DNA from: Macrostomum lignano
Taxonomy: Eukaryota
Length of the DNA stretch: 64,000 bases
Direction: 5' to 3'
Assembly (NCBI GenBank): GCA_002269645.1
Contig: NIVC01001880.1
Coordinates: 162,030-226,029 of the forward strand
This document shows, in pieces, positions 11,124 through 12,813 of the stretch. Below the pieces are notes generated by a model. It ran no database searches, was not told the DNA's origin, and was given only the letters and a program-made list of their open reading frames with translations. The position numbers were made by a program, and so were the translations under genes. Numbering within the stretch: position 1 is the stretch's first letter; each line of letters starts with the position of its first letter.

Positions 11124-12813
11124 CTAGTCGCTGCACACGGAGTTCAAGAGGCCCACTATGGCGCATTTCAAGCCTTTGCAGCAGCGGATTTGCCGGCCCG
11201 GCATGCCCGGCACCGTGCAGTCCTCGCCGAACTCGCTGCACCGGTGCGGCTGGCTGGGGCAGCAGCTGCCGGCCGCTGCGGGTGGGGCGGGTGATCCGAA
11301 TATGTGTTTGGGTGCCTGTCTGTGCCTGTCTGCCTGTGCCTGTCTGCCCATGCCTGTCTGCCTGTGCCTGTTTGCCTGTGCCTGTCTGAGTGTGCCTGTC
11401 TGAGTGTGCCTGTCTGCCTGTGCCTGTCTGCCTGTGCCTGTCTGCCTGTGCCTATCTGCCTGTGCCTGTCTGCCTAAGTGTCTGTCTGCCTGTGCCTGTC
11501 TGCCTGTTTGTGCCTGTCTGTCTGTGCCTGTCTGCCTGTGCCTGTTTGCCTGTGCCTGTCTGCCTGTGCCTGTTTGCCTAAGTGTCTGTCTGCCTGTGCC
11601 TGTCTGCCTATGCCTGTTTGCCTGTGCCTGTCTTCCTGTGCCTGTTTGCCTAAGCGTCTGTCTGCCTGTGCCTGTCTGCCTGTGCCTGTCTGCCTGTGCC
11701 TGTTTGCCTGTCTGTGCCTGTCTGCCTGTGCCTGTCTGCCTGTGCCTGTCTGCCTGTGCCTGTCTGCCTGTACCTGTCTGCCTGTGCCTGTCTGCCTGTC
11801 TGCCTATGCCTGTTTGCCTGTGCCTGTCTGCCTGTGCCTGTTTGCCTAAGTGTCTGTCTGCCTGTGCCTGTCTGCTGTGCCTGTCTGCTGTGCCTGTCTG
11901 CCTGTGCCTGTCTGCCTGTGCCTGTTTGCCTGTCTGTGCCTGTCTGCCTGTGTCTGTCTGCCTGTGCCTGTTTGCCTGTGCCTGTCTGCCTGTGCCTGTC
12001 TGCCTGTGCCTGTCTGCCTGTGCCTGTCTGCCTGTGCCTGTCTGCCTGTGCCTGTCTGAGTGTGCCTGTCTGAGTGTGCCTGTCTGCCTGTGCCTGTTTG
12101 CCTGTCTGTGCCTGTCTGCCTGTGTCTGTCTGCCTGTGCCTGTTTGCCTGTGCCTGTCTGCCTGTGCCTGTCTGCCTGTGCCTGTCTGCCTGTCTGCCTA
12201 TGCCTGTTTGCCTGTGCCTGTCTGCCTGTGCCTGTTTGCCTGTGCCTGTCTGCCTGTGCCTGTTTGCCTGTGCCTGTCTGCCTGTGCCTGTCTGCCTGTG
12301 CCTGTCTGCCTGTGCCTGTCTGCCTGTGCCTGTCTGCCTGTGCCTGTTTGCCTGTGCCTGTCTGCCTGTGCCTGTCTGCCTGTGCCTGTCTGCCTGTGCC
12401 TGTCTGCCTGTGCCTGTCTGCCTGTGCCTGTCTGCCTGTGCCTGTCTGCCTGTGCCTGTCTGCCTGTGCCTATCTGCCTGTGCCTGTCTGCCTGTGCCTG
12501 TCTGCCTGTGCCTGTCTGCCTGTGTCTGTCTGCCTGTGCCTGTCTGTCTGTCTGTCTGTCTGTCTGTCCGTTTGTCCGTCTTTCTGTCTGTCTGTCTGTC
12601 TGTCTGTCTGTCTGTCTGTCTGTCTGTCTGTCTGTCTGTCTGTCTGTCTGTCTGTCTGTCTGTCTGTCTGTCTGTCTGTCTGTCTGTCTGTCTGTCTGTC
12701 TGTCTGTCTGTCTGTCTGTCTGTCTGTCTGTCTGCCTGTCTGTGCGTCAGGATGTCAACTTCAGACTTACCTGCAAGCCCCAGTATGAGGCAGAAGTACA
12801 GAGCTATCTGCAT
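11124..12813 (-). CDS. Secreted 64-aa inhibitor-cystine-knot (knottin)-like peptide, two exons (12813-12771 and 11275-11124)
   Basis: Exon 1 ATG...GCA G|GTAAGT (phase 1); exon 2 cccacccgcAG|CG GCC GGC joins in frame. Product MQIALYFCLILGLAAAGSCCPSQPHRCSEFGEDCTVPGMPGRQIRCCKGLKCAIVGLLNSVCSD*: hydrophobic signal peptide plus C-x6-C-x11-CC-x4-C-x9-C. Confidence 0.8.
11310..12740. repeat. Compound microsatellite: degenerate tgcctg/tctgcc repeat followed by (TCTG)n; fills the knottin intron
   Basis: Read directly; pure (TCTG)n from about 12540 to 12735. Confidence 0.95.

What the first reader, a model, noticed from the sequence alone, without database searches (positions are those of the whole stretch)
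11124..12813. Hidden secreted cystine-knot (toxin-like or antimicrobial) peptide gene split by a 1.5-kb microsatellite intron
The ORF track shows two unrelated repeat-contaminated ORFs. Joining the GCAG|GTAAGT donor at 12771 to the CAG acceptor at 11275 gives, in frame, MQIALYFCLILGLAAAGSCCPSQPHRCSEFGEDCTVPGMPGRQIRCCKGLKCAIVGLLNSVCSD. It has a signal peptide and C-x6-C-x11-CC-x4-C-x9-C, the C-C-CC-C-C framework of ICK peptides (conotoxin framework VI/VII, spider toxins, antimicrobial knottins). An Arg precedes the first knot Cys (possible processing site), and an extra CC pair lies near the cleavage site. Gene predictors would easily miss it; function is unknown.
Basis: partly seen in the sequence, partly recalled or inferred. 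Interest (0 to 1): 0.82.

Follow-up and report, generated by a model that had tools for sequence, protein, structure and literature searches.

The report
Unannotated flatworm knottin-like secreted peptide gene
A small two-exon gene that no annotation lists probably sits in the genome of the flatworm Macrostomum lignano and would encode a 64-residue secreted, disulfide-rich peptide with the cysteine spacing of knottin toxins, but there is no expression or homology evidence yet and its function is unknown.

Summary
On the minus strand a 43-nt exon (ATG, a hydrophobic 14-residue start, CAG|GTAAGT donor) joins in frame across a 1,495-nt intron to a 152-nt exon ending in TAG. The intron is almost entirely (GACA)n plus a 14-bp minisatellite. 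The product is the 64-aa peptide as written. The window is Macrostomum lignano (assembly Mlig_3_7, contig NIVC01001880.1). The C-C-CC-C-C framework alone is not significant (0.85 expected per window). The conjunction is: this is the only signal-peptide-like mini-exon with a consensus donor in 128 kb, it is in the right phase, exon 2 has GC3 = 0.92 like neighbouring genes, and GC falls from 0.68 to 0.34 at the stop. Both exons are intact where visible in two other genomic copies, but those copies are about 99% identical, so selection cannot be tested. Nothing is annotated at the locus in any copy. No homologue was found among 1.84 billion protein representatives. Knottin resemblance rests on sub-threshold matches (Pfam Toxin_7/Toxin_12, two PDB knottins, one ICK Foldseek hit) and an AlphaFold core model with pLDDT 75. 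A toxin or antimicrobial role is unsupported (net charge 0 to +1). Verdict: probably a real orphan gene for a secreted cysteine-rich peptide (about 0.6). The knot fold is plausible but unproven.

The parts
12771..12813 (-). Exon 1 (coding part): ATG plus 14 codons plus 1 nt, encoding MQIALYFCLILGLA(A), most of a signal peptide. An in-frame TGA lies 4 codons upstream of the ATG.
   Evidence: It is the only hydrophobic ATG mini-exon with a GTRAGT donor in the window. Kyte-Doolittle mean is 2.2-2.45 over residues 1-17. It is 49/49 identical, donor included, in the third genomic copy L003.
12765..12770 (-). 5' splice donor GTAAGT, preceded by CAG (a perfect CAG|GTAAGT consensus); the intron is phase 1.
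   Evidence: CAGGTAAGT occurs once on both strands of the 64-kb window.
11276..12770 (-). Intron of 1,495 nt, 96% of it repeated 11-mers: (GACA)n at the 5' end, then about 100 copies of a 14-bp unit (CAGGCACAGGCAGA on this strand). This strand of the repeat has almost no T, so it is stop-free in all frames by composition alone.
   Evidence: The ADAM introns next door are only about 50-130 nt, so this intron is unusually long locally.
11276..11294 (-). 3' splice acceptor: a C-rich pyrimidine tract, TCACCCGCCCCACCCGCAG, ending in CAG.
   Evidence: It is identical in the duplicate locus L002.
11124..11275 (-). Exon 2 (coding part plus TAG stop): the end of the signal peptide (AAG) and the 47-48-aa mature peptide with 8 Cys (CC-x6-C-x6-C-x11-CC-x4-C-x9-C). 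All Cys codons are TGC.
   Evidence: GC1/2/3 = 0.53/0.59/0.92 and codon log-odds is +22.5 bits against -44 and -15 in the other sense frames. 0 of 282 control windows match its periodicity. It is not repeat-derived. In L002 the only change is a synonymous CCG to CCT.
10900..11123 (-). Presumed 3' UTR (extent inferred). It is AT-rich (GC 0.34 in the first 150 nt), has no canonical AATAAA, and has AGTAAA variants at about 11085, 11073 and 10925.
   Evidence: The boundary is inferred only, and it must end before the ADAM gene start at 10549.

Best explanation
This is a genuine but unannotated two-exon gene of Macrostomum lignano (NIVC01001880.1:173153-174842, minus strand) encoding a 64-residue prepropeptide.

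[quoted passage not shown] The leader is cleaved after AAA or AAG (residue 16 or 17) in the ER. The 47-48-residue mature peptide oxidises its 8 cysteines into 4 disulfides, giving a compact beta-rich, knottin-like core (Cys27 to Cys62), with the N-terminal CC pair forming a fourth bridge that may be vicinal. The peptide is then secreted.

Shown: the sequence, frame, splice signals, coding-type composition, retention in duplicated copies, and absence from the annotation. Inferred: transcription, splicing, signal cleavage, the disulfide pattern and secretion.

The biological role is not determined. My ranking, all weak, is an epidermal or gland secretion acting on other organisms (defence or prey), then a reproductive-tract or seminal-fluid peptide, then a protease inhibitor.
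For: The splice join is exact and in frame. The hydrophobic ATG mini-exon with a consensus donor is unique in 128 kb (1 observed against 0.33 or about 0 expected). A rough joint chance of such a mini-exon lying within 1.6 kb upstream, on the same strand and in phase, is 0.33 x (1.6/128) x 1/3, about 1e-3.

Exon 2 has GC3 = 0.92, against 0.78-0.89 in six neighbouring genes. Frame-specific codon log-odds is +22.5 bits, and GC drops from 0.68 to 0.34 exactly at the stop. 0 of 282 control windows match its periodicity. The equally scoring antisense frame is a Met-less, Ala-rich mirror ORF.

The mature part has an even number of cysteines (8), and a hydrophobic leader gives way to a polar mature part. 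Exon 2 and the acceptor are intact in L002 with one synonymous change. Exon 1 and the donor are identical in L003.

A phase-1 intron splitting the signal peptide is the architecture of the mussel C-C-CC-C-C peptide genes (PMC4558851). The core-only AlphaFold model has pLDDT 75 without an alignment and four beta-strands. All the best sub-threshold matches are knottins.

Non-annotation is explicable: coding calls in the genome paper came from TransDecoder (10.1101/151654), whose default minimum ORF is 100 aa (my own knowledge, not checked here).
Against: There is no transcript evidence of any kind. No homologue was found among 5.8 billion clusters or 1.84 billion representatives, and the exact product is absent from 15 billion proteins, which include assemblies of public sequencing runs.

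The locus is not annotated in any of three copies, although the annotation was RNA-seq-guided. The intron is more than 10 times longer than neighbouring introns and entirely repetitive. The leader has no basic residue in its n-region, and there is no canonical AATAAA.

The duplicates are 98.9-99.6% identical, so their intactness says little. The cysteine framework alone is at chance level. The full mature-peptide model is poor (pLDDT 58). The crude codon-score null was passed by 14% of GC-matched stop-free windows.
Confidence: 0.6

Rival explanations
1. There is no functional gene. Exon 2 is a GC-rich stop-free stretch, either a chance ORF or a decayed or very young proto-gene, next to a minisatellite. 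The upstream ATG and donor are fortuitous, and nothing is translated.
For: The cysteine framework is expected 0.85 times per window by chance. No homologue, no annotation and no exact product were found anywhere. The first-stage reader scanned many windows, so a conjunction of about 1e-3 per window can still turn up somewhere in a 0.76-Gb genome. 14% of GC-matched stop-free windows reach the same codon score in the crude null.
Against: Third-position GC periodicity of 0.92 confined to one sense frame, together with a GC break exactly at the stop, is hard to get without a coding history. The donor is unique and perfect, and the signal-like leader is in the correct phase. The core gets pLDDT 75 from a single sequence. 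The exon is not repeat-derived.
Confidence: 0.27
2. The exon is real but the transcript structure is different. Exon 2 could be joined to another acceptor inside the repeat, adding an Arg/Gln/Asp/Thr-rich low-complexity propeptide. It could be read from the in-frame ATG at about 11351, giving a 75-aa product without a leader. It could be SL trans-spliced. Or it could be part of a polycistronic unit or 5' leader of the ADAM17-like gene that starts 575 nt downstream.
For: The minus strand of the repeat has no stop in any frame and contains many CAG|G sites. An in-frame ATG-initiated 75-aa unspliced ORF exists. 38.8% of M. lignano genes are trans-spliced and about 7% of transcripts are multi-gene precursors (10.1101/151654). 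The ADAM gene lies head-to-tail 575 nt downstream on the same strand.
Against: The repeat is purine-rich and nearly T-free, so it lacks pyrimidine tracts; the only good acceptor is the one at 11276. A cysteine-rich product without a leader would sit in the reducing cytosol. Exon 2 ends in an in-frame stop, and the ADAM gene has its own ATG and signal peptide. The unspliced 75-aa product is not on record either.
Confidence: 0.13

Closest known systems
Inhibitor cystine knot (knottin) peptides: spider toxin families Pfam Toxin_7 (PF05980) and Toxin_12 (PF07740), purotoxin-6 (PDB 6F61), plant bidentatide (8HJC), remipede double-ICK phi-Xibalbin3-Xt3a (7RZ3)
   Same: Both have a secreted precursor, six cysteines in C-C-CC-C-C order, a CC-x4-C segment followed by a hydrophobic last loop, a predicted small beta-sheet core, and a size of 35-50 residues. 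These families are the best matches in every search.
   Different: All matches are below threshold: 15.6 bits against a cut-off of 27, 12.2 against 21, phmmer E = 0.4-0.7, Foldseek E = 7.4. Loop 2 is long (11 residues). There are two extra adjacent cysteines at the N-terminus. The disulfide connectivity is unknown, and the organism has no venom apparatus.
Mytilus CRP-I peptides (MgCRP-I; PMC4558851)
   Same: Both are spiralian, lineage-restricted, short secreted peptides with a C-C-CC-C-C array. In both, a phase-1 intron splits the signal peptide after about 14-17 residues and the whole cysteine-rich part sits in the last exon.
   Different: The CRP-I consensus is C(X3-6)C(X1-7)CC(X3-4)C(X3-5)C, and loops 2 (11) and 5 (9) here fall outside it. 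CRP-I genes have four exons, a roughly 15-residue pro-region and a dibasic KR/RR site, whereas here there are two coding exons and only a single Arg. There is no sequence similarity.
Nemertean mucus ICK toxins (alpha-nemertides, U-nemertotoxin-3; PMC10674772, PMC6410017)
   Same: These are ICK-type peptides secreted by soft-bodied, unarmoured marine spiralian worms, which gives a plausible ecological analogue (epidermal secretion).
   Different: No detectable sequence similarity. Those peptides were found in mucus by proteomics, whereas nothing is known about expression here.
Cone-snail O-superfamily conotoxins (framework VI/VII)
   Same: The same cysteine order, and a prepropeptide with the mature toxin at the C-terminus.
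   Different: There is no match to the conserved O-superfamily signal sequence or to the Pfam Conotoxin model. There is no long propeptide, and the loops are longer.

Membership tests
Inhibitor cystine knot / knottin | Six cysteines in the order C-C-CC-C-C within about 25-50 residues | tested here: met
   C27-x6-C34-x11-C46C47-x4-C52-x9-C62. This pattern alone is at chance frequency in the window.
Inhibitor cystine knot / knottin | Disulfide connectivity I-IV, II-V, III-VI, with the third bridge threading the ring | not testable with these tools
   The structure tool returns no coordinates or Cys-Cys distances. Disulfide mapping or NMR of the folded peptide is needed.
Inhibitor cystine knot / knottin | Compact antiparallel beta-sheet/hairpin core that matches solved knottins | tested here: inconclusive
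   The core model has pLDDT 75 and strands at 5-10, 18-22, 26-30 and 34-38. The sole Foldseek PDB hit is an ICK toxin, but with E = 7.4, probability 0.09 and TM 0.47. The full mature model has pLDDT 58 and no relevant hit.
Pfam Toxin_7 (PF05980) / Toxin_12 (PF07740) | Score at or above the curated gathering threshold | tested here: not met
   Toxin_7 scores 15.6 bits against 27, and Toxin_12 scores 12.2 bits against 21. Only the C-terminal CC...C...C part aligns.
Secreted prepropeptide | N-terminal signal peptide with a hydrophobic core and small residues at -3/-1 | tested here: inconclusive
   Kyte-Doolittle mean is 2.2-2.45 over residues 1-17, followed by a sharp drop, and A-A-A-G precedes Ser18. 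There is no basic n-region, and no SignalP-type predictor was available.
Conotoxin O-superfamily | Conserved superfamily signal sequence and a match to the Pfam Conotoxin model | tested here: not met
   No Pfam hit even at E = 10, and no HMMER hit in 1.84 billion representatives.
Mytilus CRP-I | [quoted passage not shown] | tested here: not met
   Loops 2 (11) and 5 (9) fall outside the consensus, and there is no KR/RR. Only the phase-1 intron within the signal peptide is shared.
Cationic cysteine-rich antimicrobial peptides | Marked net positive charge of the mature peptide | tested here: not met
   Net charge is +1 for residues 17/18-64 and 0 for residues 27-64. This lowers the antimicrobial reading but does not exclude it.

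The most novel reading that the evidence does not exclude
This is the first inhibitor-cystine-knot peptide from a flatworm: a lineage-restricted, fast-evolving secreted knottin with an unusual N-terminal adjacent-cysteine (possibly vicinal) fourth disulfide. It would be used by a soft-bodied meiofaunal predator for defence, prey handling or reproduction, and would be one visible member of a larger set of small-ORF genes that the 100-aa cut-off of transcriptome annotation has hidden in this model organism.
Probability: 0.22. Interest if true: 0.55.

Novelty: new member of a known kind. Interest (0 to 1): 0.36.

Why it matters
Macrostomum lignano is a transgenic, RNAi-tractable model flatworm. 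A validated knottin-type secreted peptide there would extend ICK peptides to Platyhelminthes; none turned up in the literature held here. It would also be a tractable system for asking what such peptides do in a non-venomous animal. Finally, it would flag that small secreted-peptide genes, especially ones whose introns have been inflated by the tandem repeats that make up 15% of this genome, are systematically missing from its annotation. If it isn't expressed, it's simply a good-looking false positive.

Tried and rejected
1. Homology. A word-indexed search of the spliced product found no candidate. Index-free HMMER of the exon-2 product against 1.84 billion representatives gave 0 hits. Exact look-up among 15 billion proteins found nothing, while the Mpp10 control was found. 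Caveat: a search with the adjacent ADAM exon also found nothing, although ADAM genes are called on these contigs. The protein index is therefore incomplete for this species and these negatives are weak.

3. No paralogue in the window: tblastn gave only noise, and the 14-nt match at about 47.49 kb is a coincidence.

4. Selection test on duplicates. I fetched two other genomic copies (L002, L003), but they are 99.6% and about 98.9% identical to the window, including introns and flanks. There is no statistical power: 1 synonymous change in exon 2, and 0 changes in 168 nt around exon 1 against an expectation of about 2-3.

5. I tried to rebuild the exact 716-aa ADAM product of L002 as an anchor to fetch the whole peptide gene in that copy. 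The first search timed out. The second gave at least 200 equally valid exon paths, and that copy carries homopolymer frameshifts. I abandoned this route.

6. P0001's cluster mate turned out to be the window's own copy, not a third one.

7. Rfam found nothing in the window.

8. The antisense frame with an equal codon score was rejected because it is Met-less and Ala-rich, a mirror effect of GC3.

9. A literal search of the literature for the peptide sequence gave 0 papers.

10. The idea that exon 1 is an alternative leader for the ADAM17-like gene was rejected, because that gene has its own ATG and leader and exon 2 ends in a stop.

Full report
**What is there.**
- Exon 1: an ATG at 12813 opens 14 codons plus one base (MQIALYFCLILGLA + G), ending at 12771 in CAG, followed by GTAAGT.
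- Intron: 1,495 nt (12770-11276), almost entirely tandem repeat. TRF reports one array at 11316-12739 (period 14, 102.6 copies). A pure (GACA)n run comes first, then a 14-bp minisatellite.
- Acceptor: the intron ends in a C-rich tract, TCACCCGCCCCACCCGCAG.
- Exon 2: 11275-11124, which reads in phase to a TAG.
- Product: the 64-residue peptide as given, with C-x6-C-x11-CC-x4-C-x9-C and an extra CC six residues before the first of these cysteines.

**Where it comes from.** The Mpp10 ORF of the window is encoded on NCBI assembly GCA_002269645.1, contig NIVC01001880.1. The window is the last 64 kb of that contig (window coordinate + 162029). The literature identifies that accession as the Mlig_3_7 assembly of the free-living marine flatworm Macrostomum lignano. 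The genome paper states that simple and tandem repeats make up 15% of the genome, that 180 Mb lies in duplicated blocks at least 95% identical, that 38.8% of genes are SL trans-spliced, and that coding potential was assigned with TransDecoder (10.1101/151654).

**Neighbourhood.** Directly downstream on the same strand is an ADAM17/TACE-like metalloprotease gene. Its CDS is 10549-7115 (780 aa in the GenBank annotation) and it has its own start codon and leader. Further away are a non-LTR retrotransposon, Mpp10, a thiolase, a kinase and a GC-rich 7TM-like ORF. Half of the window lies in repeated 11-mers.

**Is it more than chance?**
- The cysteine framework by itself is not. A loose, stop-free C-C-CC-C-C pattern is found twice in the six frames, the second time inside the ADAM disintegrin domain. 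Simulated sequence that keeps local composition gives 0.85 per window.
- The leader exon is unusual. Scanning both strands for ATG-initiated, stop-free mini-exons with at least 10 of 11 hydrophobic residues that end in GTRAGT finds exactly one, this one. The simulated expectation is 0.33, or about 0 if G|GTAAGT is required. CAGGTAAGT occurs once in 128 kb.
- Requiring the mini-exon to lie within 1.6 kb upstream, on the same strand and in the right phase, gives a joint expectation of roughly 1e-3 per framework hit.
- Exon 2 looks like coding sequence of this genome. GC at codon positions 1/2/3 is 0.53/0.59/0.92, and six neighbouring genes have GC3 of 0.78-0.89. A codon log-odds trained on those genes gives +22.5 bits in the proposed frame and -44 and -15 in the other sense frames. 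GC falls from 0.68 to 0.34 immediately after the stop.
- None of 282 stop-free, non-repeat, non-genic 49-codon windows reaches this periodicity.
- The antisense frame that scores equally is the expected GC3 mirror: Ala-rich and without a Met.
- Exon 2 is not derived from the repeats. Its recurring 11-mers are scattered single hits.

**Duplicated copies.** Using neighbouring annotated proteins as anchors, I recovered two more genomic copies.
- L002 (NIVC01000107.1) has the same gene order and contains exon 2 with the identical acceptor and stop. The single difference is CCG to CCT, Pro to Pro. It is cut off inside the intron.
- L003 (NIVC01001006.1) contains exon 1 plus the donor, 49/49 identical, and lacks the retrotransposon. 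It is cut off on the other side of the intron.
- These copies are too young to test selection. L002 is 99.6% identical to the window across 3 kb of the ADAM gene, introns included. L003 differs by about 1.1% substitutions in unique sequence.
- Intactness is therefore consistent with function but is not evidence for it.

**Annotation and homology.**
- The gene lists returned with the loci show nothing called at the peptide locus on the window's contig, in L002 or in L003.
- The spliced product shares fewer than three 5-mers with any of 5.8 billion cluster representatives.
- It has no HMMER hit at E of 0.001 or better among 1.84 billion representatives.
- It is not among 15 billion sequences by exact look-up, whereas the Mpp10 control is.
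- These negatives are weakened by one fact: a search with the ADAM exon also returned nothing, although ADAM genes are called on these contigs. The index is therefore incomplete for this species.
- A 64-aa ORF would also fall below TransDecoder's usual 100-aa minimum (my knowledge), so non-annotation is expected even if a transcript exists.
- I could reach no transcript data. Expression is untested.

**Fold and family.**
- Pfam gives only the spider ICK families: Toxin_7 (E = 0.019-0.056, 14-16 bits against a cut-off of 27) and Toxin_12 (E = 0.31).
- phmmer against PDB sequences with the six-Cys core puts two knottins on top: bidentatide 8HJC (E = 0.4) and purotoxin-6 6F61 (E = 0.68).
- AlphaFold without an alignment gives pLDDT 58 for the 49-residue mature part. 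For the 39-residue core it gives pLDDT 75, with four beta-strands, and all five models fall between 67 and 75.
- Foldseek of the core model against 350,542 PDB chains returns a single hit, the remipede double-ICK toxin 7RZ3: 38 columns, 37% identity, TM 0.47, but E = 7.4 and probability 0.09.
- These results all point the same way, but each is sub-threshold. They aren't independent either, because all are driven by the same cysteine spacing.
- Disulfide connectivity, the defining feature of a knot, could not be tested.
- The mature peptide has net charge 0 to +1, so it does not look like a typical cationic antimicrobial peptide.
- No paper held here reports an ICK peptide from a flatworm. The nearest spiralian parallels are nemertean mucus ICK toxins (PMC10674772) and mussel CRP-I peptides. 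The CRP-I genes share the phase-1 intron inside the signal peptide, but their loop consensus and dibasic pro-site are not met here (PMC4558851).

**Verdict.**
- The most likely reading (about 0.6) is a real, unannotated, lineage-restricted gene for a secreted peptide with four disulfides. Its single intron has been inflated by minisatellite expansion.
- A knottin fold is plausible (roughly 0.35-0.4 overall) but unproven. A toxin or antimicrobial role is speculation.
- The main rival (about 0.27) is a non-functional ORF that happens to combine good signals.
- A smaller rival (about 0.13) is a real exon used in a different transcript structure.
- One look at existing RNA-seq alignments at NIVC01001880.1:173153-174842 would decide between them.
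- This would be a new member of a known kind. It is of moderate interest, mainly as a pointer to hidden small-peptide genes in a tractable model flatworm.

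Noticed in passing
window 7115-10549 (minus strand): An ADAM17/TACE-like metalloprotease-disintegrin gene (780 aa in the GenBank annotation) lies head-to-tail 575 nt downstream of the peptide gene. It has the HELAHNLGAAHD zinc motif, its own leader (MYLSPEKRFVMLFSVSGLAAA...) and short GT-AG introns of 50-130 nt. Both leaders contain GLAAA, which is probably a coincidence.
   Followed up: partly
L002 about 18255-21217 (alignment A2, columns 2468 and 2868): The duplicate ADAM copy has two 1-nt homopolymer deletions relative to the window, and its annotated product is shorter (716 against 780 aa). 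This is either incipient pseudogenisation of one homeologue or long-read homopolymer error.
   Followed up: partly
window 21039-27659: A non-LTR retrotransposon with intact ORF1 (26444-24864) and ORF2 (24867-21157; APE endonuclease, RT, RNase H) is present only in this copy of the region. The third copy, L003, has about 0.5 kb in its place, so this is a recent insertion. Window 18054-20572 is also missing from L003.
   Followed up: partly
whole window, e.g. 32152-32897, 36688-37704, 50856-52082, 57810-58514: Minisatellite density is extreme: 50% of the window lies in repeated 11-mers. This generates dozens of long artefactual ORFs on both strands, so ORF length is useless as a coding signal in this genome.
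   Followed up: partly
window 1-3670 (plus strand; extends upstream of the window): A 1,423-aa single-exon orphan protein with no Pfam domain and AT-richer codon usage (GC3 0.47) than its neighbours. It has a 94%-identical paralogue, BOX15_Mlig000249g2, on contig NIVC01000107.1.
   Followed up: partly
window 59552-62041 (plus strand): An 829-aa uninterrupted, very GC-rich (about 72%) ORF with a weak rhodopsin-type 7TM match (PF00001, 23.5 bits, below the cut-off) and a long N-terminal extension.
   Followed up: no
window 10585-10702; L002 about 21270-21500: The (GGATGGGGAGCG)n minisatellite between the peptide gene and the ADAM start differs in length by 120 nt between the two copies. Repeat-length change is therefore the main kind of divergence between these young duplicates.
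   Followed up: no
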